Below, one piece after another: positions 32,912 to 54,582 of a stretch of DNA of 64,000 nucleotides; positions within the stretch are counted from its first letter, which is position 1; each line of letters starts with the position of its first letter. The stretch is from the NCBI GenBank assembly GCA_965112735.1, contig OZ218951.1, positions 5,084,001 through 5,148,000 of the forward strand. The letters are read 5' to 3'. The position numbers and the translations under genes were made by a program. The stretch comes from Phaeosaccion multiseriatum (taxonomy: Eukaryota; Protista; Ochrophyta, other classes). The notes under the pieces were generated by a model that saw only the letters and a list, made by a program, of their open reading frames with translations, was not told where the DNA came from and made no database searches.

Positions 32912-34845
32912 ATGCCCATTATTGAGGTACGTTCGTACGCGCACTTCCTCCGCCCCGCTTCACCTCGTCACAACTCAAACGACGCGCTCACTTATTGTGT
33001 GTCCATGCATGCTTCCCCCTTACTCCCGTGCTGTTGTGATACCTCTCCGTGTGGCAGTCTTACCGCCTTGGGCAAGCCATCATAAGTGGTCAGAGCATCC
33101 AAAGGGTGCAAGCGGCTGTGAGGGATCTCGTCGCTGTAAACGGAGGGAGGAAGGCATGCTTGGACGAGCCCCTCCATATGGAGCAATGGAGGTGGCCTGC
33201 CCTGCACTTAGCTGTACTGGAAAGGAGACATGATATCATTGGTCTTCTTCTGCAAGAGGGGGCGTCGCCGAATGCTGGAGGGACTGCAGCTGGCGCGAGT
33301 GCGTTGAGGGTTGCAAGTGATTTTAAGTATGCTGCTGTCCTACAACAGCTCCTGGATGCTGGTGCTGACGTCAATACAGTGATGAGCGATGGAAGTACGG
33401 CTCTCATGGAGGCCTCCCAGGAAGGAGCCGTGGTGGTGGTGCACAAGCTGCTCTCTGCCGGTGCCAGGGTGGACTTGGCTGACGATAGTGGCGATACGGC
33501 TTTGGTCCGCGCCTCAGAGAATGGACACCATAAAGTGGTGCAGCAGCTCCTTGATGCTGGTGCTGACGTCAATAAAGAAGGGGGAGATGGAATTACGGCT
33601 CTCATGGAAGCCTCCGAGGGAGGAGACGTGGTGGTGGTGCACAAGCTGCTCTCTGCCGGTGCCAGGGTGGACTTGGTTGACGATAGGGGCGATAAAGCTT
33701 TGAACTACTCCTCCAGACTGGGACATCATGAAGTGGTGCAGCAGCTCCTTGATGCTGGTGCGAAGGTGAATTGGGCGAATGAGAAGGGGCGGACGGCGCT
33801 TACTGATGCCTCGTTTTCAGGGCATGAACAGGTAGTCCAACAGCTTATCAGAGCTGGCGCGGAGGTCGAAAAGGAAGATTCAGAAGGCTGTACGGCCTTG
33901 CTCGTGGCCTCACAGGAAGGGGATCATGCGGTGGTGCAGCTGCTGCTAGAGGCAGGCGCTGATCCCAACCACATGGAAAGACAAGCTTTCGACCGCCTGC
34001 TAGAGGCAGGCGCTGATCCCAACCACATGGAAAGACAAGCTTTCAACCGCACCCCCTTGTTCATGGCCGCACATGGCGGATACCACAGGGTCACGCAGCT
34101 GCTCCTCATCTCCGGGGCAAATGCGAATTTGGGAGGCCGCAGCGGATTTTTTCCGCTCTATGCTGCAACCGAAGGTGGACATGGTGCAACATATGGCCTT
34201 GTGGTGGAGCAGCTCATCGCTGCCGGCGCGGAACTCGAAAGCCGTACTGGTGAATGGGGGAGAACACCATTGATGGGAGCGACTATACAAGGGTCCAGAA
34301 GCATTGTGCGGAAGCTGCTCAGGGCTGGGGCAGAGGTGAATGCGATCAGTAGCGATGGATTTGGAGCGATACATTTGGCATGTGCCGAGGGCCATGCTCG
34401 TGTCGCGGAGGATTTGATCTCAGCAGGTGCTGATGTGGAAATGCTGACGGTGGTTACGCCTTTAATGATGGCTGCTGCGAACGGCCATGGGGCAGTGGTC
34501 CGTGTGCTGCTGTCTGCGGGGGCTGATACTGAAAATGAGGGCGCTGTCAACGGCGGAACGCCCTTGTTTCATGCGGCACAACAAGGCCACAGCGGGGCGG
34601 CGCTGGAGCTACTCTCAGGAGGGGCCTCACTGACAAAGGCTTTGACAAAAGCACGAGAGTATATCGATGGAGCAGCATGTATAGAATTCCTCCTGGCTGC
34701 GGAAAGACATCACTTTGCGTCACAAAGCGCGTTGGACCTGATGCGGGGCACTGACCTTCTCTTTAGCAAGGAAGGGAGGCTGAAGGTGTCGCAGAGAGAG
34801 CTTAGCCCTGAGGTGCTGCAGGAGGTGGCGGAGGAGATGGCATGA
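32912..34845 (+). CDS. Ankyrin-repeat family member ANK-1 (micro-exon MPIIE plus one long exon; ~16 repeats)
   Basis: Exon 32912-32926, intron to cag 33057, then ORF to 34845. Repeated TAL..AS..GH..VV..LL.AGA.VN, ending in the family C-terminus ...RELSPEVLQEVAEEMA. Confidence 0.92.
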
Positions 34846-35294
34846 CAAGCTCCCCTCCCCTCTCTTTTCTGAACCGAAACTCATTCATGTGAAACTCTTA
34901 CTTCGTAGTACCTAACAAATATAGAGGAGCCAGCGACTTAGGGAAGAAGAAGAAGGAATGGTTGTCATTCTCACGGCCTTTCCACCTGTGAAGTCACTGT
35001 GACCCTAGCCCTCCGCAGCGAAGGATTCTCACTCCTGTTGCCGCTTTGTCCGAGTTCGACTGCCGATGGTGTCTCAAGAGGCCGAGAAGGTCAACGCGTG
35101 TGTGCGTGCGTGCACGTCGCAGAATAAGCTAGCGTAGTGTTTCCCCCAAGAAAGCCAACGAAATGACGACAAAAACACCGGTGATTGGGTGTCCGAAAGT
35201 TGGGGTGTGGAGTAAGCGAGCGTCTGCAGCTTCTTATTCTCTCTCTCCCCCGCTCTCTCTCTCTCTCTAGCTAGGGTGTAACAATATTTGCAGG

Positions 35295-35540
35295 ACGCCT
35301 TGAATATGCTCCACACGGACGCCAGGCCTGGAGCGGCAGCAGCGGCCAGCGAGACACGCAGGGAGCAGCACTAGCTACGCCAACACCTACGGCCCCGAGG
35401 TAGTGCGCCTCATCACCTTCACCATCGAGACCCATGGACGACTCGTCGGCGCAATCCCTTCTAGCTAGGCTACACGCCCTGGTAGGCGAGCACGTCGTCT
35501 CCCGTACCGGACCCACCGTCTCTCACACCACCAATGATCA
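35295..35540 (+). mobile_element. Degraded fragment resembling the restriction-like endonuclease end of a CRE-type non-LTR retrotransposon
   Basis: Removing a 4-bp insertion gives PGAAAAASETRREQHYANTYGPEVVRLITFTIETHGRL...AQSLLARL, matching the A..AE..K...Y...PF..ET.GR pattern of RLE-clade elements. Confidence 0.5.
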
Positions 35541-35551
35541 ACCCCTGATAC

Positions 35552-35642
35552 ACTATCGCCCACATTCTCGATAGCGCGCTATCGGCCGCCGGTCGATAGC
35601 GGATAGCGCGCCGGCGATAGCTAGCGGATAGCAGATAGTGGC
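35552..35642. repeat. ATAGC-rich intergenic island 3
   Basis: cgatagcgcgctatcggccgccggtcgatagcggatagcgcgccggcgatagctagcggatagcagatag. Confidence 0.65.
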
Positions 35643-35963
35643 TGCATCAGGGGTTGAGAAACTGAAACTAAGGGCCATGTCCTCTCCAAACTTCGACGCC
35701 TCAGCAGCTGCAGCCACCATAATTCTCTCTCTCTCTTCTTCCTCTTCCTCTCCTTTTAGTCCTTTATAGCTTATAGCCGTTGCGCTCCAGCGGGCTCGAT
35801 ATGATAGATCGATTCGCCATAGGATCCTGTCCCCGGGGCGATGAGCCATTACTTTTAGACAATCATAGATGGCACTTAAGGGCCCCTTGTAATCCCGCCT
35901 CCGGGCTGCTACTCTCATCCCGCCTCCCTATCTTTGCCGTACCCACGCCCTCTTTCCGCTACC

Positions 35964-37595
35964 ATGCCAAGTATTGAGGTATGAGCATTTCCGCCTCACC
36001 TTGTCACCCTCCAACGATCCACTCACGATTCCCCCCTACTGTTGCGATACCTCTCTGTGTGACAGGCTACCCGCCTGTACCAAGCCATCCGCGGTGGCCA
36101 GAGCGTCCGAAAGGTGCAGGCGGCGGTGAGGGCCCTCGTCGCTAAGAACGGAGGGCGGAGGGCATGCTTGGACGAGCCCGTCGACGGGTCCGGGTTTCCT
36201 GCCCTACACGTCGCGATGAGTGAGAAGAGGGGCGACATCGCTGCGCTTCTGCTGCAAGAGGGGGCGTCGCCGAATGCTGCTGCAGAGACTACAAATGGCA
36301 CGAGTGCGTTGATGGCCGCATGTCATTATAAGGATGCTGCTGCCGTCCAACAGCTCCTTGATGCTGGTGCTGACGTAAATGCACAAGCGAGAGATGGATT
36401 TACTGCTCTCATGGAGGCCTCCCAGGAAGGAACCGTGGTGGTGGTGCACGAGCTGCTCTCCGCCGGTGCCAGCCTGGACTTGGTTACCACCTGTGGCGTT
36501 GCGACGGCGTTGTTCATGTCCTCCCAAAACGGGCACCATGCAGTGGCGCAGCAGCTGCTGTCGGCGGGGGCAAAGGTGGACTGGGCAAATGAGAAGGGGC
36601 GTACGGCGCTCCATCAAGCCTCACATGGAGGACACGAAAGGGTAGTCCAGCAGCTGCTCTCAGCCGTCGCGGAGGTCGACAAGGAAGATTCAGAAGGCTT
36701 TACGGCCTTGCACCTTGCCTCCCAGGAAGGGCATCATGCGGTGGTGCAACAGCTGCTGTCGGCCGGCGCTGATCCCAACCACTTGAGTCTTCATGGCCAC
36801 ACCCCCTTGCGCATTGCCGTAGAAATGGGACACGACAGGGTCACGCAGCTGCTGCTCACCTCAGGGGCAGATGCGAATTTGCCAGACCGCGACATGTGGT
36901 TTCCGCTGTATATAGCAAGCAGTGAAGGGTATGGCATTGTGGTGGATCAGCTCATCACAGCCGGTGCTGACCTTGAAAAACGTAGCGGCGAGCGGCGGCG
37001 AACTGCGTTGATGCAAGCTTCTATGGAAGGGCACCGAAGTGTTGTGCGGAAGTTGCTCAGGGCTGGGGCAGAGGTGGATGCGATTGATGGCGACAGGTGT
37101 GGAGCGATACACTTGGCAGCTGGAAAGGGCCATGCTCGTGTCGTGGAGGAGCTCATCTCAGGAGGGGCTGACGTGGAGATGCTGTCTCAAAAGGGGCCTA
37201 GTGCTGCTACGGCCTTGATCATGGCTGCTCTACAGGGCCATGGGGCAGTGATCCGTGTGCTGCTATCTGCGGGGGCTGATCCTGACAATGGGAAGGGCTT
37301 CCTTAAATACATGTCGCCCTTAGTTTGTGCAGCGTGTAAGGGCCACAGCGGGGCGGCGCTGGAGCTGCTCTCTGGAGGGGCCTCACTGGAAAAGGCTCTG
37401 ACAGCAGCACGAACGTATGGCGATGCAGTTGTTGAATTCCTCCTGGCCGCGGACAGACAGCACTTTGCGTCACAAAGCGCGTTGGACCTGATGCGGGGCA
37501 CTGACCTTCTCTTTAGCAAGGAAGGGAGGCTAAAGGTGTCGCAGAGAGAGCTTAGCCCTGAGGTGCTGCAGGAGGTGGCGGAGGAGATGGCATGA
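35964..37595 (+). CDS. Ankyrin-repeat family member ANK-2 (micro-exon MPSIE plus long exon)
   Basis: Exon 35964-35978, acceptor at 36065, ORF to 37595. Same N-cap (ATRLYQAI..GQS...VQAAVRALVAKNGGRRACLDE) and C-tail as ANK-1. Confidence 0.92.
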
Positions 37596-38124
37596 CAAGC
37601 TCACCACGCGCGGTGTCCGCTGCCGGGAAGGGGGGATGCGGGCGGTCCCGAGCCACTCACACACCGTCAGGCAGAAGCAGGAGCGGCAGGGAGTCGAGGA
37701 CGAGGGTGGGAAGCAGAGAAGAGAAAGATGGGCAGGCCTTCCATCTCCAGGCAAGTCTTGACGAAACGCAAGCAGGGTACTCGGTGGTCACCGCCCGTGA
37801 GACTTTCAGCTTTGCATGGGGGGAAGGCGCTGTGGCAGAGGTGCAGGAGGTGTGAGGGAGCGGGGAAGCAAGAGGGAGCCGTAGGAGGAGGACGAGGACG
37901 AGGAGGTGGAGGGCTGACTCGTGTTAAGGGGGAGGAAGGCACAAACGACCACATTAGCTATTGGACATCGTCTGCGGGCGCACGGTAGGGGGCTGATACC
38001 GCGACGACGTACATGAAGGCAGCACCAACCGTAGTGTCTTGGTCCAGCAGAGGGTAGATAGACAGATAGATGCAGAGTGTTGGGCTTGGATACGGTAGAT
38101 GGGTTGTAATTATTCATGTGCTAG

Positions 38125-38535
38125 TCCAGGACTCACTCCATACCCCCCCCACACCCAGTCCATACCCCCCCCACACACCCAGTCAAGCGGACATGAGTGC
38201 GTGCGTCAAGGAATGGACTCACGGGGAGGGGCTCAACAGTCGTAGAGGATTTCAAGAAAGTAAAAAAAAACCCAAAAAACTGAAGCATAAGGGGCTTAGC
38301 TTTGTGTACTTCACACACGAGTCTGTCTGTAAGGAGTAAACCGAAACCGCCCCTATAGCTTTATCACTCTCCCCTTCATATGTATAACTGGAAGTTGTGC
38401 TTGATTGAAAAAAGGGCGACTCAGATTCTGGAGTCGCAATGTCCTGAGTGGCAAGTCTCTCCCCGTGAGTCCCTTCCTTCGTCCTTGATGCACGCAACCA
38501 TATGAGCTTGACTGGGTGTGGAGTGACGCCTGGAA
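38125..38535. repeat. Imperfect inverted repeat (MITE/foldback-like) between convergent genes
   Basis: cacccagtcaagc...tgcgtgcgtcaagga...ggactcacggggag (38175-38228) is matched in reverse complement at ~38458-38520. Confidence 0.5.
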
Positions 38536-38674
38536 CGAGGTCCGATTCATACATTAATACCCATCCATCTTATCCGTCTGTCTGTCGGCCCTGACGCCCT
38601 TGCTGTACTTGAGAGAATAAGGCACGTCCTTCGGTCCTCGCCTTCCCCCTCCTTCATCGTAACTGCCTTTGCCT

Positions 38675-41600
38675 TTACTTCCCTCTCGAGGTGCAAAAGT
38701 TCTCGTGCTGTAGCCTGGCCCTCCTGTCTCGGAGCGTCTTGCCACAGTAGGCGCAGGGCTGGGCCTTGGTCTCTCCCGGCCCCTCCGGCTTCAAATTGGC
38801 GCTGTGCTTCAGGTACGCACCCTCGTTGGCGAAGGAGTAGCCACAGATGGCACAGTAGCGCCGTCCCTCCCGCCCCTCTCCCTCTCCCGTGCTACTCCTG
38901 CTGGTGAGGCTTACCCTCTCCTCCTCGGGGTGCTGCGGCTGTACCACCAACTGCTGTGGGCTCTCCCCATCGACGTCGACGTATATGCTGCCCCGCTGCT
39001 CCCCCCCCTCCTTCTCGTTGGCCCCAAACCAGTCCGGAGTGATGTCCGTGCAAGGCCCTTGGTGCTTGGCTACGATGTGCTGGACTAAGCTTCGAGCGTT
39101 TCCGAAACGGCGCTTGCAGTACTTGCATTCGAACTCATGGTTGGCCTTTCCCACGGCTTTTCTCTCTCCTTCTTGTCCTTCTTGCCCTTCTTGCCCCTCT
39201 TGCCCTTCTCTTCCTCCTCCTCCTCCTCCTCCTCCTCCTCCTCCTCCTCCTCCGCCAGCCGACGAATATGAAAGGGGCAGCGAGGAGGCCTCTCCCCCTT
39301 CTTCTCCTCCCGACGCTCTTTGGGTCTCGCCCGTCATCCCTGTGCCTGCGATTTTGAGTGGTGCGTTCCCCCCGGTGCGTTCAGTCCCACCACCACCACC
39401 ACCACGACCACCACCACCACCACCACCACCACAAGTCGCGGCAGTCGGCGATACAGCACCAGTAGGACCTGTAGCAGCAGCAGTCGCAGTCGCCTCTCCC
39501 TCTCGACGTGTACTGCCATTCCTGCTCGGCTCTCCCTCTCTCATCTGTACGAGCTTGAGCTCATGCACCTCCCGTGTGTGGCCCCTCAGCCCCTGCTCCG
39601 TCCTGAACGACCGCTCACACTGCCGGCACCTGTATGCATGCTGCTGTATCGCCAACGGCTGCTGTTGCTGCTGTTGTCGCTCCTGATTGAGGCTGACCCC
39701 ATTCGTGGATTCTGCTTCTCCTTCTCCTCCTCCCCCCCCCCCTCCTACACGCGGCTTCTCCCGTGTACATGCGCGCTTCGCGTCCTCCTCACGCCCCTTT
39801 GCGGTGACCCCTCCAATAACCTCCGCCCCTGCCGCTGCTTCCCCATCAACCACCCACGGAACAACGCAGCGTGAACGTGAACATCGTGCAGCAGTTGGTG
39901 ATACAGCAACAGCCCATCGACCGCCTCGACCCGCTCCCTCACCCCCACCCTCCGCCCCTGCCCCCCCCGCTGCTTCTCCTCCTGCAGCTGGTGCTGTACC
40001 ACCAACTGTTGCTGCTGCTGCTGCTATGACTGACCCCTCTTCATCAGCCTCGCGGCAGAGAGAGAAGGTGACACTCCTCGTTTGCCTCCTTCTGAAAGAC
40101 CCTCCGCTCTGATGCCTTTTGCACAGATAGCCGTGTCTCACGAGAGCGTGGGAGGGAAACTCCGTACTCCCAACCTTGGACACATATGGCAGACAGCAGA
40201 GAGCAAAGGTATATAACAGGGAGGAGCAGCAGCAGTACCGAGCAGGTAGGTAGGAGTTAGCAACAGAGAGGGAAGCAGGGGGGGACAGAAGAGACTAGGG
40301 AAGAGTTTGAGTGTGAGGAAAGGCGCAGCAGCGCTGTCTCTCTTCCTTTCTTCCTTCCTGCCTGCCTGTCTGCTTGCCTCAATCCGTACCACCAAGGTCC
40401 GCTCCGCAAAGACTCGCTCCTGCTGTCCTCACCATACTATGTGCCTCCAAATCCTCCTCCCCTCCCCCAATCCTCCCATATGCCTCCAACCCCCCCTCCA
40501 TCTTTCTCCTATATGCCTCCAAATTCTCTCGTCTCCCTCCCTTCGTCCCACCCTCCCTCCCACCACACCCACCTGCCGCAGCCCCTGCCGAGCGGCCTGC
40601 GCGTGTAGCCTCCACCCCTGGGGCTGCGCGTCCGCCAGACTCACGTGAACGAGCCCCCCGGGGGCCAGCAGCGGCGCCTGACTCGCACTGCACATGTACG
40701 TGTGTTTATGCGTGGACAGGGTATGGATCACCAACACGCAGAGGTAGGTATGCAGTAAGCAGAGTAAGGATGGAGACAGAGAGGGAGGGAGGGAGGGAGG
40801 GAGGGAGGGGAGGTGAGAGAGACATCCATGAGGGACGGGGGTGGGAGTGGGAGTGAGTGGGTTGGGAGTGAGGGGAGGAAGGGACAATGAGCAAGGAGCA
40901 GAGAAGTACGTGTGTGGCTTGGAGAGAGGGAAGGGCGGGGCATTCCTCGGACGATACATGCAGGGTTACACGGCGGCTGGGCATCAATGGGGCGAGAGAG
41001 GGAAGGGAGGACATACACAATGAGGAGAAGACAAGGATCAAGGCCTGTTCGCTCAGCCCCCTATCTCTCCCTGTCTGTCTCTGTCTCTGTCCCTCTCTCG
41101 CTTTTTGTTCTTCTCTGTCTGCCTCTCCCTCTCTTTCTCTCTCCCCTCCTCCCAATCTCTCTGTCTGTCCGTCTGTCTCTCTGCCTGTCTACCCCCCTTT
41201 TTTGTGTCTCTCTCTGCCTCTCACGCCTATCTCTCTGTCTCTCTCTTATGCTCTATCTTCATACCTCTGTCTCCCTTTCTCTCTCCCTCCCCCACCCACC
41301 TGTGCAGAAAGTGTGCCAGGAGAGAGCTGTGCCTGTGCACGTCTTCTGTGCCAGAGTGGGGGTGGTGAAACACAACGTGGTCGAAGGGCCTCTCCTCCCG
41401 CAGTAGCCGCAGTAGAACTTCCTCCTCCTCCTCGTTCCTGGTGCTGCTGCTACCGCTGCTGCTGCTGCCCGTCCTCTTGTCGCCTCCCCCCACCCCTCCA
41501 ACTGCTGCTTCTCCCTCTCCCTTCAGAATCTTTGGGGCTTGTCCCGTGGTGTCTTGGCCCTGCTGTAGCTGCTTCTGCTCCCCGTGTATTTTCTCCCTTC

Positions 41601-42048
41601 CGTGCTGCTGCTGCTGCTGCACCCCTCCTAATGGCGCTTCATCGCTTCGCAACGCAGCCCAGCTCAAATCGGTGGCATCCACAGAGAATCTAACGATAAC
41701 ACCAAGAGCTCGCAGCTTTGGGAGCATATGCACACACTCAGGGTACTTTTTGACCAGCTCTTCTCGGCTATCGTAACACGAGGCCACCAGCAGGACATTG
41801 CCTCCAAGGGAGGTGGACGAGGAGGAGGTGTGGTGTGGAGAGACAAGCCGACGACATAACCTCCTCCTCTTCTTTCCGGCGCTTCGGTCCACGGAGATTC
41901 CGCCTCCTCCCTTGCCTGTTGCAGCAGCGGCGTTCCGCAGTGCTTGGTCCCGTGCCTCCAAAATCATTTGCGCAAAAGCGAGAGTGAAGCTGAAGTTGCC
42001 CTCCCCCACGCAAAGGACGCGGACTAAGCCCCTCTCCCCTTGCTCCAT
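38675..42048 (-). CDS. BMT5/DUF2431-like rRNA (uridine-N3) methyltransferase domain plus multiple C2H2 zinc fingers, 3 exons
   Basis: RVLCVGEGNFSFT, SCYDSREELVKKYP, FSVDATDL, FDHVVFHHPH, LAPGGLVHVSL. Fingers include CRQCERSFRTEQGLRGHTREVH and CKYCKRRFGNARSLVQHIVAKH. Confidence 0.85.
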
Positions 42049-42469
42049 GATATTGAGGAGGTCCCAGAGGGAGAGGGGGTAGGGGGTTGCAAGAGGAAGG
42101 GGTCGGATTGACTTTTTTTTCTTTTTCTCGTTTTCTGGCTTTGAACGTGTTAGTTCTCCAATTTTTCTCGTGGCCACTTCCACAATCGCATCGATTTTCG
42201 GATCGACACCAGTTTCGATGCGATTTACGTTACAAGCTCGCCGCTACCCCTATGTTTAGGGGTATGCCGGTCACGGTCATGATCTTCCCATTCAAATCCA
42301 TGGCGGGGAAGTGGGAAATCTGGATGAGAAAACAGGGAGGACAGCGTCGATAGCGCACGGGAAGCACATCACTGGATGCAGCGTGCTTAGGGCTTTAAGA
42401 ATGCTCTCTGTGACCTTTCTCCTGCTCATCATCTTCAGGTGGCAAAACGCCCTCCAAGCGAAAATTGAA

Positions 42470-44744
42470 ATGGCCACTCCGGGGCGTCCTCACCACCTCC
42501 GGTACCTGGATCGATGTACTTTCAAGCATGCAGAAACGCCCTGCGGCAAGAAGACAAGAGTGACACTGACTGTCGCACCCAGTGGAACCAGGAAGGAGCA
42601 GAAGCGCTATGGCAGCGTGTGCTCTAAGGAGCACGTCCAGGAGACGGAGGATGAACTTCTTGCGGAACGAATGGAACAGGCCAACATCAAGACGCCGCCG
42701 GCAAAGAGGAGCGAGATACAGCATCGGTGGGCTTCGCTGGTGAAGGGGTCCAAGTATTACTTTCCCAAGGGTGTATCAGAGTCCGCAGCGAAGAAGAGGA
42801 AGCTCCGAGACGGCGATTGGGGGGAGGAGGGTCCAGCTGAGGATACGGCCGGCATGCTCTTCACAGAGGCCGCAAGAAAAGCAGAGAAGCTGCGGAGGCG
42901 AGGGAGAGGCAAGAGGCAGTAAGCAAGAAAGCAGAGGGTCTTGCGGAGAAGCGCACAGCCCTAGAAACGGCGAGGCCGAGATGCAGCCTCAGAAGCGGAG
43001 CAGGGGTCGGGTGACGCAGCAGCACAGCAGCAGGAGCAAAGCCTTTCTTCTGCGACCAGGTGGAGTACTACGAGGGCGACGCCGAGCTTGCTGCGCTTCA
43101 CTACGGGCTGTGCACCTACAAGGCGGCTTGTGTGAAGGGAGCCTGTGACGACTGCAAGCCCGGCGTGAAGGGTATCCCCCATTGTGAGTACAGCGACGGA
43201 AACTACACGCACACGGTGCAGGTGATAGAGTGGGCGCCAGTGGTGACAAAAGAAGGGAAGAAGCACGACCGGCAGAACGTGGTTGTGGAGATGACTGTGG
43301 CCGAGCTGTCTAGGAGGGCCGAGCAGTTCCTCCGGCAGAGGTACATCCAGCATCATGTCGCGACGAAGGTGCAGAGGCTTGCTGCCGAGGTGACTCTGAA
43401 GCGACTCAAGCCCCATCAGATCATAATGGGGGTGGACTTTTCGGAGAAGCATAAGCTCCGCGGTACGTCAGAGCAAGAGGGGCGCCCACTTCTCTCCCCT
43501 CCCGTCCTCCCCCCACCCTTCCTCCCTCCTCTCCCCCCCCCCCTGCTCCCTCCTTTTCCTTCCTAATGTATTCGTGTGTTTCTCTCCTGCTCTCCCTTTC
43601 ATCAGGCGCGTTCTCTGTGACCTGCGGCACATGTCCGTCCGCGACGCTCATGATTTGCTACGTGCACTGCCGCCCCAGGATGTGGGGGGGGAAGCCCGTC
43701 CATGACGTGCACGCTCAGATTTTCATCTCCGACGACTCCCTTCAAGACCAAGCCTTCCATGAGCACTGCTGCAGCCTCATGCATCAGGAGTACAAGGGAT
43801 ACTTCAAAAATCACGGCCTCAAGCTGAAGGAGTGGATCAACGTCACTGACGGGTGCGCCAAGCAGTACAAGGGCGCAAAGAACTTCGCCTTCGTTGCCTC
43901 CTGTCTCAAGTTGTGGGGGGTGAAGATGACGCACATGTTCCACACCACCTCGCATGGTAAGGGGCCCCACGATGGGCTTGGGGGTACCATCAAGGCCATG
44001 GCATCGAGGAGGACGGACATGGGGGAGAGGGTGATGAACTCGGCGAAGGACTTTGCCGCCTTCGTGACTGAGATGTTTGACACCACCGCCCAGCCAATGT
44101 CGGACGAAGACTACTTTGGAAAGGGCTGGACACCTTTCACAGCCCGGATGACCCGTGTGAGGTTTATTGCCGCCGGCAGCATTCAGCGGGAGGACGTGAA
44201 CATCAAGGGCATCCAGGGCACCCAGAGTATATACCACTACGAGGGCGATGTGGAGAAGGGTGGCTTCGTTTCGGAGGCCACGATTGGAGCGTTCCATCAA
44301 GGCCAGGACTATGATGTTGCGTACCCACTTCATGTTCGCACGATGAGCTGTAGCTGCACCCCCTGCAGCAAGGGCGAGTACGAGGACTGCTTCGCCGCGA
44401 AGAATGGGCAAGGCGACCTGTTTGGGGGGGAGCCAAAGCTTGTGTACCTGTACCAGTCTATAGTGGGAGACAAGGGCCCGCTTCTCACTCGGGCCAGTGT
44501 AGTCGCGATGAACCGGCCTACATTGGAGTCTTGCTGCGCACGGGAAGGGATTAAGTACTCGAAAGGGACCCTCAAGCAGGGGCTGGTGCAGCTCCTGTTG
44601 GCGCGCCTTGCGTCCCGCGAAGCACCCGCGGAGCAGCCTGTGACGCCCGTTGTAGAGCCTTCGGCACCCCCAACACCTCCCACCACCCCTGCTGTCCTCT
44701 CTAGCCCGCCCCCGGCCGCTCCAGACACTGCTGTCATGATATAA
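42470..44744 (+). mobile_element. Sola-superfamily (Sola2-like) DDD transposase, spliced; 5' part disrupted; SAP/HeH-like C-terminal segment
   Basis: Cys cluster CVKGACDDC and triad motifs MGVDFSEK, VTDGCAKQYK, TSHGKGPHDGLGGTIK, followed by GIQGTQSIYH and SCSCTPC. Phase-consistent intron at ~43463-43604. Stops at 42920 and 43012 separate the N-terminal ORF. Confidence 0.75.
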
Positions 44745-44864
44745 TTGACATAAATCTCACAGAAATTTTACTTTTAGTGCTTTTAATTGACATAAATATT
44801 ACTTTTAGTGTTTTCAATATTTCTCCCAACCCCCCTTTTCTCCCTCGCCCTTCGTTTCTCGGCA

Positions 44865-45399
44865 GTGCTGCGAACCGGACGACAGCTCTTCTTGTAGAGG
44901 GCATCCTTGCGCAGATTCTGACCTACCACACACCTTCGTACACCTTTCTGGCCAAGAGTTACGAGCTTTGGAAGCTGGGGCAGAGCAGCGATTGTGGAAG
45001 TGGCCTCGTGTCCTTGAAGAAGATGAAGGGAGAGCATTGGTGCCTACCTTTCCAGCCGTCGCCGAGTGGCAAGGCAGTGCTGGTGGCCAATCGGCCAGCA
45101 GGAGTCGGAAGCAGTTTCCTCTGAGGCTCAATTGGGCGTGGACGGTGTGGAAGGGGCAGGGTCAGACCATGAGGGGCAACAAGTTGAGGGCAAGGCATGA
45201 GGGGCAAGATGGTTCTCGTTCCGGGCACACAGGAGAAGACGTTTGGCCTCACCTACGTGGCTATCTCCAGAGCCACCAATATCGACAGTATTGGCATCTA
45301 AAAGAGAAGCGGCTCGGAATTGTTATGGGTGGCAAGGCGTTAGACAAACGGATCGAAGAGGAGCACGCGGCTTCGGGGGCTTCAGGAGCGGACGCTTGA
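44865..45399 (+). mobile_element. PIF1-family helicase C-terminal relic (Helitron-like), frameshifted
   Basis: RKQFPLRLNWAWTVWKGQGQTM (motif V) and, after a catgaggggcaa duplication that shifts the frame, KMVLVPGTQEKTFGLTYVAISRATNIDSIGI (motif VI). Confidence 0.75.
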
Positions 45400-45469
45400 G
45401 AGGGTCAGAGGGAGGAGGGTGGTGCAACCAGTGGTGCAACCAGGGTGGGAGGGTTATAAGTGTGAGAGG

Positions 45470-46112
45470 GAGCAGCCGCTGCTGCTGCTGCTGTTGTCAC
45501 CATCTCTTCCCCTCTTCTTTGCCGGCTCAATTTGCTGCTCAGGGCCCACATTCTCGTGCCCCGACTCCAACCCCTCCTCCTCCACATTGTCATCATCCGC
45601 CCCTTCGCCGTTGCCCCCCCCCCCCCCCCGCTGCGACTACAGCAGCCGCTGCTGCTGTTGTTGCCAGCTCTTCCCCTCTTCTTTGGGGGCTCACTTCGCT
45701 GCTCTCCCGCCCCAACCTCTTCCCTCCTCCTTTTCCTCGTGCTCCACCCCCTCACCACCTCCCAGGGGTACTCGAAATATGTATGTATGACGTCATATAT
45801 ACAAATTTCGAGTACCCTTGGGAGGTGGTGAGGAGGGGAGCACGAGGAAAAGGAGGAGGGAAGAGGCTGGGGGGAGGGAGCAGCAAAGTGAGCCACCAAA
45901 GAAGGCAGGAAGAGCGGGCGACAACAGCAGTAGCAGCAGCGGCAGCTGTAGTCGCAGCGGGGGCGGGGGCAATGGCGAAGGGGCGGATGATGACAATGGG
46001 GAGGAGGAGGGGGTGGAGTCGGGGCACGAGGATATGGGCCCTGAGCAGCAAATTGAGCCGCCGAAGAAGAGGGGAAGAGATGGTGACAACAGAGGCAGCA
46101 GTAGCGGCAGCT
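45470..46112. repeat. ~640-bp imperfect palindrome with no spacer
   Basis: Centre atgac|gtcat at 45791/45792. The ~320-bp arms are reverse-complementary (e.g. ggctcaatttgctgctcagggccca vs tgggccctgagcagcaaattgagcc). Confidence 0.9.
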
Positions 46113-46474
46113 GTAGTCGCAGCGGGGGCCGGGGTAACGGCGAAGGGAAGGATGAGGAGGAGGGGGAAGACGAACAGGCTGAAGATTTCGACCCCTTTTT
46201 TTTCGAGGTACGTGCGAATGTAAGGGACTACAGTGTGTTCGTGTGCTCTTGCTTTTTTCATCTTTTTTCTCCCTCCTCCCCTTTTCCTCCTTGTATTGCT
46301 CTCTTCCTTCCTTTCCTTCTCCTCTTTCCCTTTGGCTGACTCCTATCCATCCGCTCCTCCGATCCCTCCTTGTTGTACCGTCCTGTCTCAGCTAAGTCGC
46401 GAACCCGAGAAGCTGTTGAAGAAACTGGAGAAAACCTGCGCAGAAGTCGCAAGTCGCACCAAAAGCACAATGAT

Positions 46475-46723
46475 ACGCCCCACAGTAGGAGAACGTGGCG
46501 TCTTGCTCATCGACATGTGAGTCGCGATCCTTGTGCCGCTGGTACAAGGATATAGCCGCCTGCGCTTAAGTCAGAAAGCGACCAACTCGAATGCATTGAC
46601 GTAAGGAGGATGTTGGTCGCTCTCAGATCTATGCGCGTGCGGCTATATCCTTGTACCAGCGGCACAAGAATCGCGACTCACATGTCGATGAGCAAGACGC
46701 CACGTTCTCCTACTGTGGGGCGT
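46475..46723. repeat. Long hairpin: ~85-bp near-perfect arms extending imperfectly to ~112 bp, ~25-nt loop
   Basis: 46475-46559 is the reverse complement of 46639-46723 with one mismatch. The inner arms, ending in agcgaccaac / gttggtcgct, also pair. Confidence 0.9.
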
Positions 46724-47084
46724 TGGGCATCCCCGCTGGGGTGGTGGAGGAGCTCGTGCTGGGCAGCAGCAGCAGCCAAGGTGTGCCGTCTCATGCATTC
46801 CTGTTCCCGGGGGAGGAAGGCGCTAAGGCGAGGGAGGCGCAGCTCAGGAATGCCGAAGGAAAGGTCATTCGAGAGGCTCCTCCACAGCCACGGAGTGGGC
46901 CGGACTCCGCCACAGAAGCTGCTCTACACAAGCTCCACCGCGACGTAGAGGAGGAGGAGGAGGGGAAGGAGAAGCTCCTGGATTGGCGGAACATTTCTCC
47001 GGAATCCAAGGCCAGCACGCGAGCGCTCTTTCAGCAAGCGGCCGCCCTAGTGGGGGGGGCTGCAGCGCCGGGACAGTATGAGTC

Positions 47085-47280
47085 CCCCCCCAAGCAGCTT
47101 AGTACTTACTGTACCCCCCCACTCACTCACGAAACAGCCTTACCTCTGGAGACTTGTTCCTTCTCACCAAGTGCAGAATGAGCCACCCCTCAACGGATGC
47201 AAAAAGGATTATGTCTCCAGAGGTAAGGCTGTTTCGTGAGTGAGTGGGGGGTAAAGCAAGTACTAAGCTGCTTGGGGGGG
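47085..47280. repeat. Hairpin: ~68-bp arms, ~59-nt loop
   Basis: 47085-47153 is reverse-complementary to 47213-47280 with few mismatches. Confidence 0.9.
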
Positions 47281-48196
47281 AAGGGGGGGGGGGGGGAAGC
47301 GGGGGCGTGGCGTGGCGTGGCGTGGCGGGGAATCCAAGTTCAAAGTAGTTTGTTACGAGCAAGGTATCACGTCACATTTGTTATTTGCTCACTGGCCCTC
47401 GCTTTCAGGGCTGCCAAACGCCGCACGTGTCTAGATGTAAGGCTGCATATCTTAGTATGTGTGTTAAAAATTAAAAAAAAATCGTAACAAGTCATAATGA
47501 CGATCTCTTGTTACTGCTCGTCTTGTCTCTGTGTGTGTCGTGTAGGTGGAGGGCTAGCTTGGGGCTTGCTTGGCGGCCCACTCCATGCGAGGTTAGTTTT
47601 TTACTGGTATTACAAAGGGGAGGAGGGAGGGCAGAGGGCGGAGGCACACACCGAGAGACAAGAGAGACAGAGAAGGCACCCCAGGGACTGCACTGACAGT
47701 GAAAGGGCGCGGCCTATATTACGTCAAGGCCGCTCTTCGCACACAGCCAAGGCATTCAAGGGAAGAGGGCCTCGGGGAATTTCGTTGTGTTGAAGCTCCA
47801 CGTGTGTGAGGCGTCAGAGGAGAGGAGGAGGGAGGGGCGGGCGGAGCCTCAAAGGGAACCGAAAGGACTCAGCCTCAAAGGGAGGCAGAAAACCGGCAGA
47901 GAAGGCCCTCGCCCAGTGTGTTGTTGCTCCTTTCCCTGTTTGACGTTGCGTTTTTCTTCGAGAACAATCCCCTCGAAGCTCTTTATTGGCGTTCAAAGAC
48001 GAGCACGCGAGCTCTCCCAAAGCTCCTACCACTCACACCAGCCTTCCTCGAGCGTCCCTTTCCCCTTGGTCCTCCTGCCCACCCCACAGCCCCTCACGCT
48101 GGCGTCCCATTCTTCGTGAGCACATCGCTCTCTACGTCATCCACACCGCCGGTGAGATACGCCCCTTCCATCATGCCATGAGAGGCGCCCCTTCCA

Positions 48197-49934
48197 TCAT
48201 GCCATCTCCTCCGCCACCTCCTGCAGCACCTCAGGGCTGACCTCTCTCTGCGACACCTTCAGCCTCCCTTCCTTGCCAAAGAGAAGGTCAGTGCCTCGCA
48301 TCAGGTCCAACGCGCTCTGTGACGCAAAGTGCTGCCTGTCCGCGGCCAGAAGGAACTCGATCGCTCCTACATCGCTATCAGCCCGCGCTTGAGTCAGAGC
48401 CTTTGAAAGTGAGGCCCCTCCTGACAGCAGCCCCAGCGCCGCCCCGCTGTGGCCCCGCTGTGCTGCACACGAGACAGGCGTTCCACCGTTGTGAGTGCCC
48501 TCATTGTCAGGATCAGCCCCCGCAGACAGCAGCACACGGATCACTGCCTCATCGTCCTTCGCAGCAGCACACATCAAAGCTGTGTACCCCTGAGTAGACA
48601 GCATCTCCACATCGGCACCTCCTGAGATGAGTTCCTCCACGACATGAGCACGGCCATCTAAAGCTGCCAAGTGTATCGCCCCCCACCCGTCGCCACCAAT
48701 CGCATTCACCTCTGCCCCAGCCCTCACCAGCTTCCGCACAATGCTTCTGTGTCCTTTCATAGACGCTGCCATCAACGCTGTTCTCCCACACTCATCGCTA
48801 CGGCTGTCGAGGTCAGCACCGGCTGCGATGAGCTGCTCCACCACAAGCCCATGCCCGTATTGGCTCGCGATAAAGAGCGGAAGAAGGGACCACTTGCGGG
48901 TTGCCAAATTAGCATTTGACCCCGAGGTGAGCAGCAGCTGTGTGACCCTGTGGTGTCCTGCCATTGCGGCCACCATCAAGGGAGTTTTGCCGTCAACATT
49001 TCTGTCATCCATGTGGTCAGGATCAGCGCCGGCCGACAACAGCTGCTGGACCACCGCATCATGCCCGTTCTGGGAGGCAATGAACAAGGCTGTTAAGCCT
49101 TCCGACTCTGCTTTGTCGACCTCCGCGCCGGCGGAGAGCAGCTGCTGGACTACCCTTTCATATCCTCTAAGTGAGGCTTGATGGAGCGCCGTCATCGCCC
49201 TCATATCTACCCGGTCCACCTCTGCACCGGCCGACAGAAGCTGCTGCACCACTGCATGATGGTCCTTCGCGGAGGCGAGCAGCAATGCCGTAGCGCCAGC
49301 ACCGTCAGCCATGTCCACGGCGGCGCCCGCAGAGAGCAGCTTGTGCACCAGCACAACGGCCCCTTCCGAGGAGGCCCCCATGAGAGCCGTATAGCCATCT
49401 CTCATTACTGCATTGACGTCAGCACCAGCAGAGAGGAGCTGCTGTACGACAGCAGCATCCTCATACAAGCATGCAACAATCAACGCACTCGCGCCACGTG
49501 CAGGCTCTGCAGCATTCGGCGACGCCCCCTCTTGCAGCAGAAGAGCAACGATATCACCCCTCTTCTCTCTCACCGAGAGGTGTAGGGCAAGACACCCTAT
49601 CCCGATAATGGACTCGTCCAAGCATGACCTCCTCCCGCCGTTCTTAGCCACGAGGGCCCCCACCGCCGCTTGCACCCTTTGGATGCTCTGGCCACTGGTG
49701 ATGGCTTGATAGAGGCGGGTGGCCTGCCACAAAGAGAAGGAACGAGAGAGGAAGAGGGAGAAATGGGGAAGGGGGGTGGGGGCCTCTTTGAGTGAGCCGT
49801 TCCGGTCGATGGAAGGAGGTTCATGAGTATATTGAGGAGATGGGAGGAAGAGAAGAGAAAGGGGGAGAATGCGTCTTTCCCCTCCCTCCCCTCATCCTCC
49901 TTTCCCCTACCTCGCTGCTGCACGCTCGTTGCAT
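48197..49934 (-). CDS. Ankyrin-repeat family member ANK-3 (micro-exon MQRACSSE plus long exon)
   Basis: Exon 49934-49911 with donor gtaggg, acceptor cag before 49723, ORF to 48197. Family N-cap and C-tail present. Confidence 0.92.
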
Positions 49935-50261
49935 GGATAAAGTGGTGCTGTAGACGCTTGTAGCAGGGGAGGGAGGAGGCCTGGGAAAAGGAGTAGGATC
50001 GGAGTAGCTAGGGGAAGGATACTGGGGAAGAGAAGAGAAAGTCCCACCCTATCCATAAGGCAATGAACCATTTACCATTTTTTATTTTTTTGTTTTTTGT
50101 CTCCTTCCCTTTCCTTTGCTCACAAACACTACTATCCTCTCCTTGTATGGTGGGAGAAGAAGCAGCAGCTGCTCGCAACAGCGAAGTCCGCAACCAGTCT
50201 CTGTGCTCCCTTCCAAGGGAGATCCAGTTAAGGAGAGCAAAGAGGCTCCAGCGTGGGATTT

Positions 50262-50385
50262 GGAAAGGACAGCGCAAGAAGGAGATCAAGAAGAACAAAG
50301 ACCGATCGCAAGAAGGTCCGCGAGATCAGCGCGATGATCAAGAACCCAGAGCTAATGGCTGAAGAGGTACGGAACACGGAGCACC
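50262..50385 (+). pseudogene. Truncated, frameshifted duplicate of WBP11 exon 1 plus donor site
   Basis: Near-identical to 54626-54748, but lacks the ATG region and has an extra base (aacaaagaccgatc vs aacaaggccgatc). Confidence 0.85.
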
Positions 50386-50439
50386 CGACGGAGAGGGGTG
50401 TAAGGAACGGTACGACAAGGAGGGGTCGGAGGGCTGACA

Positions 50440-51416
50440 CCATCACATCATCGACCTTGCCATAGCGTGGGGTCGAATGAGGGAAAGGGGCTACTTCACC
50501 ATACGAGTGGAGTCCGTTGACCTCATGAGGATGTTGGTCTCTCTCAGACCTACGCGTGTGTGGCTCTATGTTTGTACCAGCGGCACAAGGATCGCGACTC
50601 ACATGTCGATGAGCAAGACGCCACGTTCTCCTACTGTGAGGCGTTGGACATCCCCGCTGGGGTGGTGGACTGGGCAGCAGCAGCAGCAGCAGCAGCAGCC
50701 AAGGTGTGCCGTCTCATGCATTCCTGTTCCCGGGGGAGGAAGGCGCTAAGGCGAGGGAGGCGCAGCTCAGGAATGCCGAAGGAAAGGTCGTTCGAGAGGC
50801 TCCTCCACAGCCACCGAGTGGGCCGGACTCCGCCACAGAAGCTGCTCTACACACGCTCCACCGCGACGTAGAGGAGGAGGAGGAGGGGAAGGAGAAGCTC
50901 CTGGATTGGCGGAACATTTCTCCGGAATCCAAGGCCAGCACGCGAGCGCTCTTTCAGCAAGCGGCCGCCCTAGGGGGGGGGCTGCAGCGCCGGGACAGTA
51001 TGAGATTGACACAAAGACGCTGGCGGGCAGTGCTCACGGAAGGGATGCTGGTATCGGGGAGGCACACGCTGCTTTTTTCCCAGTACCGCGGGGACACAGA
51101 TGGAGTTGTCGGGCGGGTGCTCAACGACGAAGGACTCCTGCACATTAAGGAGAACAAAGGGTTCCTGCCAGCCGAGCAGCTCCTTGTGGCAGGCACACAG
51201 TCCACAGGCCCTGCTTCCACCCTCAACCTCGCCCCAGGAGGGCAAACGGGATGGTTTTGGCGGGTGTCAAAGGGTCAGGTGCTCTCGCTGGTGGTCCGTA
51301 CGAAAACGCCCATATGGGATGTGCCCTTGCCTTGCCCTTTCAAGCCGACTGTGAGCGGCTGGGGCTCGCATCTCTCGGAGCCGCCCTGTACATCTACTCA
51401 CCGCCGGAGGAACTGA
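50440..51416 (+). pseudogene. Frameshifted fragment of an unknown gene (shorter copy at ~46605-47080)
   Basis: Coding-like sequence (LYQRHK.RDSHVDEQDATFSYC...KLLDWRNISPESK) present in both duplication units, with no start codon, and truncated by palindromes. Confidence 0.5.
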
Positions 51417-51534
51417 CTAGTTTGTGCAGCACACCAAGAGATGCGATCCACCATTTATTTGGTGGATCGCATCTCTTGGTGTGCTGCACAAACTAGTCAG
51501 CTCCTCCGGCGGTGAGTAGATGTACAGGGCGGCT
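51379..51534. repeat. Near-perfect palindrome: 75-bp arms, 6-nt loop (tttatt)
   Basis: 51379-51453 vs 51460-51534, one mismatch. Confidence 0.95.
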
Positions 51535-51748
51535 GTTCGGTTTCGTGAGTGAGTGGGGAATGGAAGCTGCGCGTGGGTAGTGGGGGAAAGCGGGGGCTTG
51601 ACGGGGATTCAAGTTCTAAGCGCAGGTCATTACGAGCAACAGGTACCACGTCACATTGGCTCACTGGCCTTCACTTTCTGTGCTGCCAAATGCCGCACGT
51701 GTCTAGATGTAAGGCTGCATATCTTAGTATGTGTGTTACATAGAAAAA

Positions 51749-51786
<38 letters not shown>

Positions 51787-52469
51787 TAAGTCATAATGAC
51801 GATCTCTTGTTACTGCTCGTCTTGTCTCTGTGTGTGTCGTGTAGGTGGAGGGCTAGCTTGGGGCTTGCTTGGCGGCCCACTCCATGCGAGGTTAGTTTTT
51901 TACTGGTATTACAAAGGGGAGGAGGGAGGGCAGAGGGCGGAGGCACACACCGAGAGACAAGAGAGACAGAGAAGGCACCCCAGGGACTGCACTGACAGTG
52001 AAAGGGCGCGGCCTATATTACGTCAAGGCCGCTCTTCGCACACAGCCAAGGCATTCAAGGGAAGAGGGCCTCGGGGAATTTCGTTGTGTTGAAGCTCCAC
52101 GTGTGTGAGGCGTCAGAGGAGAGGAGGAGGGAGGGGCGGGCGGAGCCTCAAAGGGAACCGAAAGGACTCAGCCTCAAAGGGAGGCAGAAAACCGGCAGAG
52201 AAGGCCCTCGCCCAGTGTGTTGTTGCTCCTTTCCCTGTTTGACGTTGCGTTTTTCTTCGAGAACAATCCCCTCGAAGCTCTTTATTGGCGTTCAAAGACG
52301 AGCACGCGAGCTCTCCCAAAGCTCCTACCACTCACACCAGCCTTCCTCGAGCGTCCCTTTCCCCTTGGTCCTCCTGCCCACCCCACAGCCCCTCACGCTG
52401 GCGTCCCATTCTTCGTGAGCACATCGCTCTCTACGTCATCCACACCGCCGGTAAGATACGCCCCTTCCA

Positions 52470-54214
52470 TCATGCCATCTCCTCCGCCACCTCCTGCAGC
52501 ACCTCAGGGCAAAGCTCTCTCTGCGACACCTTCAGCCTCCCTTCCTTGCCAAAGAGACGGTCAGTGCCTCGCATCAGGTCCAACGCGCTCTGTGACGCAA
52601 AGTGCTGTCTTTCCGCGGCCAGAAGGAACTGAACACAGACTCCTGCATCGTTTGTCTCTCGGGCCAGAGTCAGAGCCTTTGGCAGTGAGGCCCCACCTGA
52701 CAGCAGCTCCAGCACTGCCCCGCTGTGGCCCTCCATGGCTGCACAATACAAGGGCGTTCCACCGTTGTGAGTGCCCTCACTGTCAGGATCAGCCCCCGCA
52801 GACAGGAGCACACGGACCACTGCCTCATCGCCCTGCGTAGCAGCAAGGAGCAAAGCTTTCATCCCATGACCATCGAGTATCTCTACGTCAGCACCTCCTG
52901 AGACGAGTTCCTCCACGACATGAGCATGGCCGTCTGCAGCTGCCAAGTGTATCGCTCCACACCCGTCGCCACTCAGTATATTCACCTCTGCCCCAGCCCT
53001 CACCAGCTTCCGCACAATGCTTCTGTGCCCTTCCGTAGAAGCTTGCATCAACGCACTTCTCCCCTTCACACCGCTACGGCTGTCGAGGTCAGCGCCGGCT
53101 GCGATGAGCTGCTCCACCACAATGCCATGCCCGTAGAGGCTCGCGATAAAGAGCGGAAGAAGGGACCAGTTGCGGGTTGCCAAATTAGCGTTTGACCCCG
53201 AGGTGAGCAGCAGCTGTGTGACCCTGTGGTGTCCTGCCTTTGCGGCCATCATCAAGGGAGTTTTGCCGTCAACATTTCTGTCATCCATGTGGTCAGGATC
53301 AGCGCCGGCCGACAACAGCTGCTGCACCACCGCATCATGCCCGTTCTGGGAGGCAATGAACAAGGCTGTTAAGCCTTCCGACTCTGTTTTGTCGACCTCC
53401 GCGCCGGCTGAGAGCAGCTGCTGGACTACCCTTTCATGTCCGTTAGATGAGGCGCGAAGGAGCGCCGTCACCGACGTCATATCTACCCGATTCACCTCTG
53501 CACCGGCCGACAGAAGCTGCTGCACCACTGCATGATGGCCATTCCAGGAGGCGGGAAACAATGCCGTAGCGCCATCACCGTCCGCAATGTCCACGCCGGC
53601 GCCCGCAGAGAGCAGCTTGTGCACCAGCACAACGGCCCCTTCCGAGGAGGCCACCATGAGAGCCGTAGATCCGTCGCTGGTTACTGCATTGACGTCAGCA
53701 CCAGCAGAGAGGAGCTGCTGTACGACAGCAGCATCCTTACATATACATGCGTTCACCAACGGAGTCGCACCATTTGGAGGCTCTGTAGCATTCGGCGACG
53801 CCCCCTCTTGCAGCAGAAGACCAACGATATCACTCCTCCTCTCTACCACAGCTGAGTGCAGGGCAAGACACCCTATCCCGATAATGGACTCGTCCAAGCA
53901 TGACCTCCTCCCGCCGTTCTTAGCCACGAAGGCCCTCACCGCCGCTTTCACCCTTTTGATGCTCTGACCACTGGTGATGGCTTGATGGAGGCGGGTAGCC
54001 TGCCACAAAGAGAAGGAACGAAAGAGGAACAGGGAGAGTTGGGGAAGGGGGATGGGGGCCTCCTTGAGTGAGCAGTTCCGGTCGATGGAAGGAGGTTCAC
54101 GAGTAAAGTGAGGGGATGGGGGCCCACAGGAGATGATCACGGGGGAGATTGCGCCTTTCCCCTCCCCCCCCTCATCCTCCTTTCCCCTACCTCGATGCTG
54201 TACGCTTGTTGCAT
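52470..54214 (-). CDS. Ankyrin-repeat family member ANK-4 (micro-exon MQQAYSIE plus long exon)
   Basis: Exon 54214-54191, acceptor before 53999, ORF to 52470. Family N-cap and C-tail present. Confidence 0.92.
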
Positions 54215-54582
54215 GGATAAAGTGGCGCTGTAGACGCTTGTAGCAGGGGAGGGAGGAGGCCTGGGAAAAGGAGGGACGAAGTCCACCCATAAAAAAATAA
54301 CTCGAAAATCACTCCATAAGTCAATGAGACCTGTGGACGCCGCCCCGCAGATGAGACTCTCGGCTTGTCTCTTTGCCTCCTGGCTCTATTCAGCCATTTC
54401 CTGCAGCTCGCAAAAGCTAGTATTATCCTCTCCTGTGTATGGTGGGAGAAGAAGCAGCAGCTGTTCGCAACAGCGAAGTCCGGAAGTCCGCAACCAGTCT
54501 CTGTGCTCCCTTCCAAGGGAGATCCAGTTGAGAAGAGCAAAGAGGCTAGCTAGGCTACTCTTCCCCCAGCGGGCGTGTCAAG

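What the first reader, a model, noticed from the sequence alone, without database searches (positions are those of the whole stretch)
32912..54214. Four-gene ankyrin family with fixed framework and hypervariable binding surface (natural DARPin-like receptor array)
Seen: ANK-1 to ANK-4 share one architecture, a 5-8 codon micro-exon plus a single intron-free exon, with a constant N-cap and a near-invariant C-tail. Framework segments (VVQQLLSAGA, LLLQEGASPNA, IVRKL.RAGAEV) are almost unchanged, while the loop and helix-1 residues differ in most repeats. Even in the closest pair (ANK-3/ANK-4): LHLSVREKRGD/LHSAVVERRSD, ARGASALIVACLYED/PNGATPLVNACICKD, LLLASAKD/LFPASWNG, RAMTALHQASLRGY/TSVTALLRASSNGH, TQGYTALMCAAAKD/GHGMKALLLAATQG. 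Yet ~620 bp of their 3' non-coding flank appears identical. Known: these positions form the concave target-binding face and are the ones randomised in DARPin libraries. Inference: a diversifying recognition repertoire, e.g. anti-virus or anti-parasite, shaped by positive selection and/or patchwise gene conversion. Caveat: the ANK-3/4 introns are visibly diverged, so the identical flank may reflect recent conversion rather than a very young duplication.
Basis: partly seen in the sequence, partly recalled or inferred. Interest (0 to 1): 0.88.

Follow-up and report, generated by a model that had tools for sequence, protein, structure and literature searches.

The report
Positively selected ankyrin binding-protein family
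A microbial eukaryote carries many copies of an ankyrin-repeat gene whose gripping surface changes 2-5 times faster than neutral DNA while a short tail found nowhere else stays fixed, the signature of a recognition repertoire in an arms race, though its targets and expression are unknown.

Summary
Observation confirmed. Four intact paralogues (ANK-1/2 on +, ANK-3/4 on -) encode 12-14 ankyrin repeats plus a 52-aa orphan tail. Positive selection is shown: dN/dS 2.2-4.8 at the concave-face positions in every model and every pair, 0.27-0.36 on the convex face. In ANK-3/4, 33% of first/second codon positions on the face differ, against 11% in the intron and 10% at silent sites. Silent sites beside the variable codons are not elevated, so hypermutation or patch conversion does not explain it. 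Conversion acts as well: a 665-bp flank is identical, and silent sites of the tail are homogenised, so tail invariance is not pure protein constraint. Read depth points to tens to over 100 copies. The tail has no homologue in any library. Its last 13 residues resemble F-box helix 1 but lack the canonical Leu-Pro, so Skp1 docking is only a guess. No RNA evidence, no target. The scan noted this or a like family on other DNA of this genome (s1-348044, s1-345950). Verdict: new variant of a known kind (diversifying repeat receptors, as in fungal ANK-NLRs), lacking any NOD domain.

The parts
32912..32926 (+). ANK-1 predicted first micro-exon (5 codons)
   Evidence: ATG...GAG|GT; homologous position
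33058..34845 (+). ANK-1 exon 2, 595 codons, about 14 ankyrin repeats + C-cap + tail
33343..33738 (+). 198-nt (two-repeat) internal duplication in ANK-1; copies diverged at face codons (10 of 24 first/second positions) but hardly at 4-fold sites (2 of 34)
   Evidence: p=0.002
33943..34050 (+). 54-nt tandem duplication in an ANK-1 loop
   Evidence: read from sequence
34687..34845 (+). ANK-1 constant 52-codon tail and stop
35964..35978 (+). ANK-2 predicted first micro-exon (5 codons)
36066..37595 (+). ANK-2 exon 2, 509 codons
37437..37595 (+). ANK-2 tail; homology with ANK-1 ends about 7 nt after the stop
47489..48153 (.). 665-bp 3' flank of ANK-3, 100% identical to 51788-52452
48197..49723 (-). 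ANK-3 exon 2, 508 codons, 12 repeats + C-cap + tail (tail 48197-48355)
49911..49934 (-). ANK-3 predicted first micro-exon (8 codons)
50130..50410 (+). Copy of the 5' end of the neighbouring Wbp11 gene, carried along in the ANK-3/ANK-4 tandem duplication
   Evidence: (about 95% identical to 54421-54774)
51788..52452 (.). 665-bp 3' flank of ANK-4
52470..53999 (-). ANK-4 exon 2, 509 codons (tail 52470-52628)
54191..54214 (-). ANK-4 predicted first micro-exon (8 codons)

Best explanation
A lineage-specific, multi-copy family of intracellular recognition proteins in a biotic arms race. Each protein is an ankyrin solenoid whose concave face binds a target protein, most likely foreign (virus or other intracellular parasite), and a constant C-terminal tail that couples every binder to one shared host partner or response. 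Diversity arises in the germ line by gene duplication (ANK-3/4 tandem), internal repeat duplication (ANK-1) and point substitutions fixed by selection; gene conversion homogenises tail and flanks. SHOWN: architecture, positive selection on the face, purifying selection on the convex side, duplications, uneven homogenisation, no transmembrane or signal segment. INFERRED: expression, foreign target, defence role, docking role of the tail. My leading named guess for the tail is a one-helix F-box that docks on Skp1 and sends bound targets to ubiquitination (about 0.2).
For: Codon models: omega 4.3 at face positions (LRT 128), 3.2 with doublet mutations allowed, 2.2 when the class also has its own silent rate (p=0.009); M2a beats M1a (LRT 126; 63 with doublets), and 21 of 29 high-posterior sites fall on the six face positions. 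Omega 2.4-3.3 with the original DARPin position set, 0.27-0.36 on the convex helix, 3.4-4.8 in all six pairs. Face codon positions 1+2 differ at 47/144 against intron 21/187 (p=2e-6) and 4-fold sites 20/206. Confident ankyrin fold, pLDDT 88.5. No hydrophobic segment (max KD19 1.54). Depth over the tail more than 100 times single-copy contigs. All four frames intact. Same selection pattern in fungal NLR ankyrins (PMC4986451) and nematode F-box genes (PMC8120010).
Against: No RNA run holds the locus. No target, no partner, no homologue of tail or N-cap. Only four sequences were analysed, and recombination is present. Positive selection does not say who the opponent is. Tail constancy is partly DNA homogenisation, which weakens the argument for a conserved docking function.
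Confidence: 0.55

Rival explanations
1. Same selection, internal opponent: the proteins track transposon proteins, selfish drivers, or self/non-self and mating determinants rather than pathogens (logic of KRAB zinc fingers or fungal incompatibility genes; from my own knowledge).
For: Fits all selection results equally; a DNA transposon and several long palindromes lie among the genes.
Against: No linkage to a toxin, driver or mating locus in the window; neighbours are housekeeping genes. The nearby transposon may be a passenger of a dynamic region.
Confidence: 0.22
2. Specific form of the best explanation: ANK/F-box substrate adaptors of an SCF ubiquitin ligase, a host-encoded mirror of poxviral ANK/PRANC proteins (not exclusive of the best explanation).
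For: Layout repeats - long helix - loop - terminal amphipathic 13-residue helix. The last residues match the hydrophobic pattern of F-box helix 1 as I recall it. Cowpox CP77 binds Skp1 with only the first F-box helix (PMC4353913).
Against: No Pfam F-box, PRANC or SOCS hit even at E 10; no PDB sequence or fold match. The canonical Leu-Pro reads Leu-Ser-Pro, which is also a generic helix-capping box. The tail model is weak (pTM 0.41).
Confidence: 0.2
3. No adaptation: the face positions are merely unconstrained, and conversion or local hypermutation makes them look fast.
For: These positions vary in all ankyrin proteins (established knowledge). Conversion is present (clustered discordant sites p=0.0045). 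Third positions of face codons are somewhat raised (15/72 against 20/206, p=0.02). Omega falls to 2.2 in the most cautious model.
Against: Relaxation caps omega at 1, which is rejected in every model. 4-fold sites within one codon of a face position are not elevated (0.095 against 0.080 in ANK-3/4; Fisher p 0.14-1.0 in six pairs). Intron divergence equals the silent rate. No A-to-N or C-to-T bias.
Confidence: 0.07
4. The genes are cargo of a transposon or relics of an integrated giant virus.
For: Transposase-like frames at 43060-44744; other ankyrin families of this genome are noted by the scan to have giant-virus-like relatives (unchecked).
Against: The element's ends (42172-45005, 18-bp TIR, 4-bp TSD) enclose no ankyrin gene. 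No viral relative of tail or N-cap. Conserved spliceosomal-type intron, host-like GC, host neighbours.
Confidence: 0.05
5. A programmed somatic diversification system (cassette assembly or templated mutagenesis).
For: Mosaic tracts between copies; relative depth of paralogue contigs differs between samples.
Against: No cassette or template pseudogenes in the window, one exon for all repeats, no mutational bias, ANK-3 stretches identical in both samples (table 8).
Confidence: 0.03

Closest known systems
Fungal NLR-like proteins with ankyrin sensor domains (Podospora anserina Pa_3_8560; PMC4986451)
   Same: Positive selection on inner helices and hairpin loops of the concave ankyrin face; repeat-number variation; recombination
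   Different: No NACHT/NB-ARC or N-terminal effector domain here; repeats within one gene are not highly homogenised; diversity lies between many stand-alone paralogues
Ectocarpus LRR-ROCO and NB-ARC-TPR candidate receptors (PMC3341825)
   Same: Birth-and-death family with diversifying selection on a repeat binding surface, proposed defence role; possibly a related lineage (scan notes call this genome a stramenopile alga; not verified by me)
   Different: Ankyrin rather than LRR/TPR; all repeats in one exon, so no exon shuffling; no GTPase or NB-ARC
Nematode F-box adaptor families (Thomas 2006 as cited in PMC8120010)
   Same: Constant small module plus positively selected binding domain in a large tandem-duplicating family
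   Different: There the constant module is a proven Skp1-binding F-box at the N-terminus; here it is an orphan C-terminal tail
Poxviral and Orientia ANK/F-box (PRANC) proteins, cowpox CP77 (PMC4353913, PMC9414399)
   Same: N-terminal ankyrin run, non-ankyrin linker, short C-terminal helix; multi-copy; 400-800 aa
   Different: No PRANC or F-box profile hit; canonical Leu-Pro absent; host-encoded with an intron
DARPins (engineered)
   Same: Fixed framework with variable hairpin and helix-1 residues; best structural hit is an extended DARPin
   Different: Natural, 12-14 repeats, extra variable positions (7, 8, 13, 30, 32), framework only 80-92% identical between copies

Membership tests
Ankyrin repeat proteins (Pfam clan) | Tandem 33-aa helix-turn-helix-hairpin repeats | tested here: met
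Diversifying repeat-domain recognition families | dN/dS above 1 on the binding face, below 1 on the framework | tested here: met
Diversifying repeat-domain recognition families | Multi-copy, birth-and-death evolution, repeat-number variation | tested here: met
   four copies, tandem and internal duplications; depth over the tail (rough)
Diversifying repeat-domain recognition families | Expression and binding of non-self ligands | not testable with these tools
   no RNA run on record
NLR/STAND receptors | NACHT or NB-ARC domain | tested here: not met
   only ankyrin profiles hit; repeats fill the protein
ANK/F-box (PRANC) | C-terminal F-box/PRANC profile match | tested here: not met
ANK/F-box (PRANC) | Terminal amphipathic helix equivalent to F-box helix 1 | tested here: inconclusive
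   helix 497-507 predicted at low confidence; pattern fits except Leu-Pro; no fold match
ANK/F-box (PRANC) | Binds Skp1/Cul1 | not testable with these tools
   needs pull-down or multimer prediction
ASB / ANK-BC-box proteins | SOCS or BC box with Leu-x-x-x-Cys | tested here: not met
   no profile hit; no conserved Cys in the tail
ANK-BTB adaptors | BTB domain | tested here: not met
   tail is 52 aa, no BTB hit by sequence or fold
Plant ANK-TM proteins (ACD6 type; from my own knowledge) | C-terminal transmembrane helices | tested here: not met
   max 19-residue hydropathy 1.54
Somatic diversifiers (VLR, DGR) | Cassettes or template repeat, biased mutagenesis | tested here: not met
   (window only)

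The most novel reading that the evidence does not exclude
A genome-wide natural DARPin-like repertoire of tens to over 100 stand-alone ankyrin binders that all plug into one host machine through a new tail module, possibly a one-helix F-box into SCF: a variable intracellular immune system of a microbial eukaryote that mirrors poxviral ANK/F-box effectors.
Probability: 0.2. Interest if true: 0.85.

Novelty: new variant of a known kind. Interest (0 to 1): 0.6.

Why it matters
Immune recognition in algae and other microbial eukaryotes is largely unknown. A large NOD-less ankyrin family under strong positive selection with one shared tail gives a direct test: find the tail's partner and one learns the output of the whole repertoire. 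It is also a natural counterpart of DARPin libraries, showing which positions evolution varies on a 12-repeat scaffold.

Tried and rejected
Tail homologues: none among 5.8 billion proteins, 1.84 billion representatives, metagenome, viral and prokaryotic contigs, Pfam, PDB sequences (35; only a chance E 0.38 match to a retroviral envelope peptide), ESM Atlas, PDB and viral folds (60, 61; best Z 5.2, generic helices). N-cap in viral contigs: none. Whole protein: only generic ankyrin proteins, at most 43% identical, none with this cap or tail. RNA structure in the tail: none (z +1.29). Nearby hairpins as small-RNA sources against the genes: best 14-18 of 21 matches, which I take as chance level without a shuffle control. 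Transposon cargo: rejected. Assembly artefact for the identical flank: rejected by double depth. Organism identification through the Rpc25 exon failed. My first thought, a BACK-like tail left from an ANK-BTB gene, found no support: the matching helix is the ankyrin C-cap. M7/M8 and FUBAR were not run; the GENECONV-like test was my own permutation version.
Full report
The window is eukaryotic: intron-rich genes with simple-repeat introns, among them Nramp, a C2H2 zinc-finger gene, a BMT5-like methyltransferase, Wbp11, Rpc25 and a PPR-Smr gene. I could not name the organism; other notes of the scan call it a stramenopile alga, which I did not verify.

Anatomy. Four long open frames encode ankyrin-repeat proteins. 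Each has a predicted 5- or 8-codon first exon, a phase-0 GT-AG intron of 87-191 nt and one large exon; 5' flank and intron position are homologous in all four. The proteins have an N-cap of about 40 residues, 12 repeats (about 14 in ANK-1), a C-cap repeat and a 52-residue tail. The ANK-3 model is a confident ankyrin solenoid (pLDDT 88.5) with a low-confidence tail of long helix, loop and short helix. No signal or membrane segment is present. ANK-3 and ANK-4 are a tandem duplication of about 4.3 kb that also copied the 5' end of Wbp11. ANK-1 has a 198-nt two-repeat duplication and a 54-nt loop duplication.

Selection. The positions in question vary in all ankyrin proteins, so the test is whether they exceed the neutral rate. 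I numbered repeats with TPLH as 4-7 and fixed the face class beforehand as 33, 1, 3, 8, 11, 12. In ANK-3/4, dN on the face is 0.43, framework dN 0.045 and overall dS 0.13; the intron gives 0.12. First and second codon positions on the face differ at 47/144, against 21/187 in the intron (p=2e-6) and 20/206 at 4-fold sites (p=2e-7). Maximum-likelihood codon models give omega 4.3 (LRT 128), 3.2 with doublet mutations, and 2.2 when the class also gets its own silent rate (p=0.009). M2a beats M1a (LRT 126, or 63 with doublets), and 21 of 29 sites with posterior above 0.9 lie on the six positions; a few others lie in the caps. With the original DARPin set as I recall it (31, 33, 1, 3, 11, 12) omega is 2.4-3.3; helix 1 alone 3.5-4.9; a control set on the convex helix 0.27-0.36; all six pairs give 3.4-4.8 without a tree. 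The internal duplication in ANK-1 repeats the pattern (10/24 against 2/34, p=0.002). Simple NG86 counts in the deep pairs give only 0.6-1.3; there the face is near saturation and has few silent sites, so the closest pair and the ML fits carry the result.

Conversion. Silent sites next to face codons are no more diverged than distant ones, and there is no directed mutation spectrum, so patch conversion or hypermutation does not create the variable face. Homogenisation is nonetheless real: the 665-bp 3' flank is identical while sequence beyond it and the intron differ by 11-13%; discordant informative sites cluster (p=0.0045); ANK-3/4 share a near-identical tract around repeats 6-7. The tail has silent divergence 0.06-0.15 against 0.26-0.37 in the repeats for the distant pairs (ANK-1/2 p=0.0016, ANK-1/3 p=0.04, ANK-1/4 p=0.015, ANK-2 against 3/4 not significant), and its last 39 nt are identical in all four. 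It forms no stable RNA structure. The tail's invariance is therefore partly a DNA-level effect, a caution for any claim that it is a conserved docking site.

Family size. Contigs of three public runs (two samples) pile up on the tail: summed depth about 14,000 at 48296 in X1 against about 105 for unique contigs, and it drops sharply past the stop codon. The tool warns that summed depth is not copy number, and overlapping contigs inflate it; I read it as tens to over 100 copies. Scan notes describe 3, 7, 8 and 14 copies in other windows (unchecked, and not all need be this family). Depth ratios of paralogue contigs between samples range from about 0.3 to 4.7, which may be copy-number variation or library bias. 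No RNA run was found.

The tail. It has no homologue by sequence, profile, language-model features or fold. A scan note suggested an F-box or SOCS box. SOCS/BC and BTB fail. The last 13 residues form an amphipathic helix whose hydrophobic spacing fits F-box helix 1, and cowpox CP77 binds Skp1 with that helix alone (PMC4353913), but the Leu-Pro is Leu-Ser-Pro here and no profile supports it. I leave it at about 0.2.

Mechanism. Most likely these are intracellular binders in an arms race: variable concave face for the target, constant tail for a shared partner, with diversity made by duplication and selected point changes. Selection I put at about 0.9; the whole defence model at 0.55; an internal opponent at 0.22.

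Comparison. The selection pattern is known from fungal NLR ankyrins (PMC4986451), brown algal LRR/TPR genes (PMC3341825) and nematode F-box genes (PMC8120010). This family belongs to none: no NOD domain, no exon-per-repeat structure, no proven F-box. My paper searches found no description of a stand-alone ankyrin repertoire of this kind, within a library that lacks most subscription papers. It is a new variant of a known kind, noted before by this scan on other DNA of the same genome. Interest 0.6.

Noticed in passing
window 42172-45005: DNA transposon with perfect 18-bp terminal inverted repeats and a 4-bp target duplication (TCGT); transposase-like frames at 43060-43566 and 43566-44744 with three Asp motifs (Sola- or CMC-like from memory); no Pfam, NCBIfam or PDB hit.
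   Followed up: partly
window 45471-46112, 46475-46723, 47085-47280, 51379-51534: Four long imperfect palindromes packed beside the ANK-3/4 duplication; the two duplication units carry different palindromes at about the same junction. No clear complementarity to the ankyrin genes.
   Followed up: partly
window 35538-35657: Small MITE-like fold-back element with short inverted ends between ANK-1 and ANK-2.
   Followed up: no
window 46724-47082 and 50645-51004: Duplicated 97%-identical segment with an open frame (46651-47181, 50706-51416) of unknown nature; its depth is relatively high in sample S2.
   Followed up: no
window 49692-51681: Run X5 (second sample) has low or zero depth over the spacer between ANK-3 and ANK-4, while some paralogue contigs are 4-5 times deeper than in X1: possible copy-number difference or library bias.
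   Followed up: no
window 34687-34845 (tail): Weak resemblance of the tail's middle to a retroviral envelope peptide (E 0.38), taken as chance.
   Followed up: no
window 63180-63917 (-): Intronless-looking PPR-Smr gene with near-identical 105-nt repeats; scan note s1-343247 describes a tandem family of such genes elsewhere.
   Followed up: no
window 19409-19981 (-): An unrelated, intron-containing ankyrin gene, 27-44% identical in pieces, without cap or tail.
   Followed up: partly
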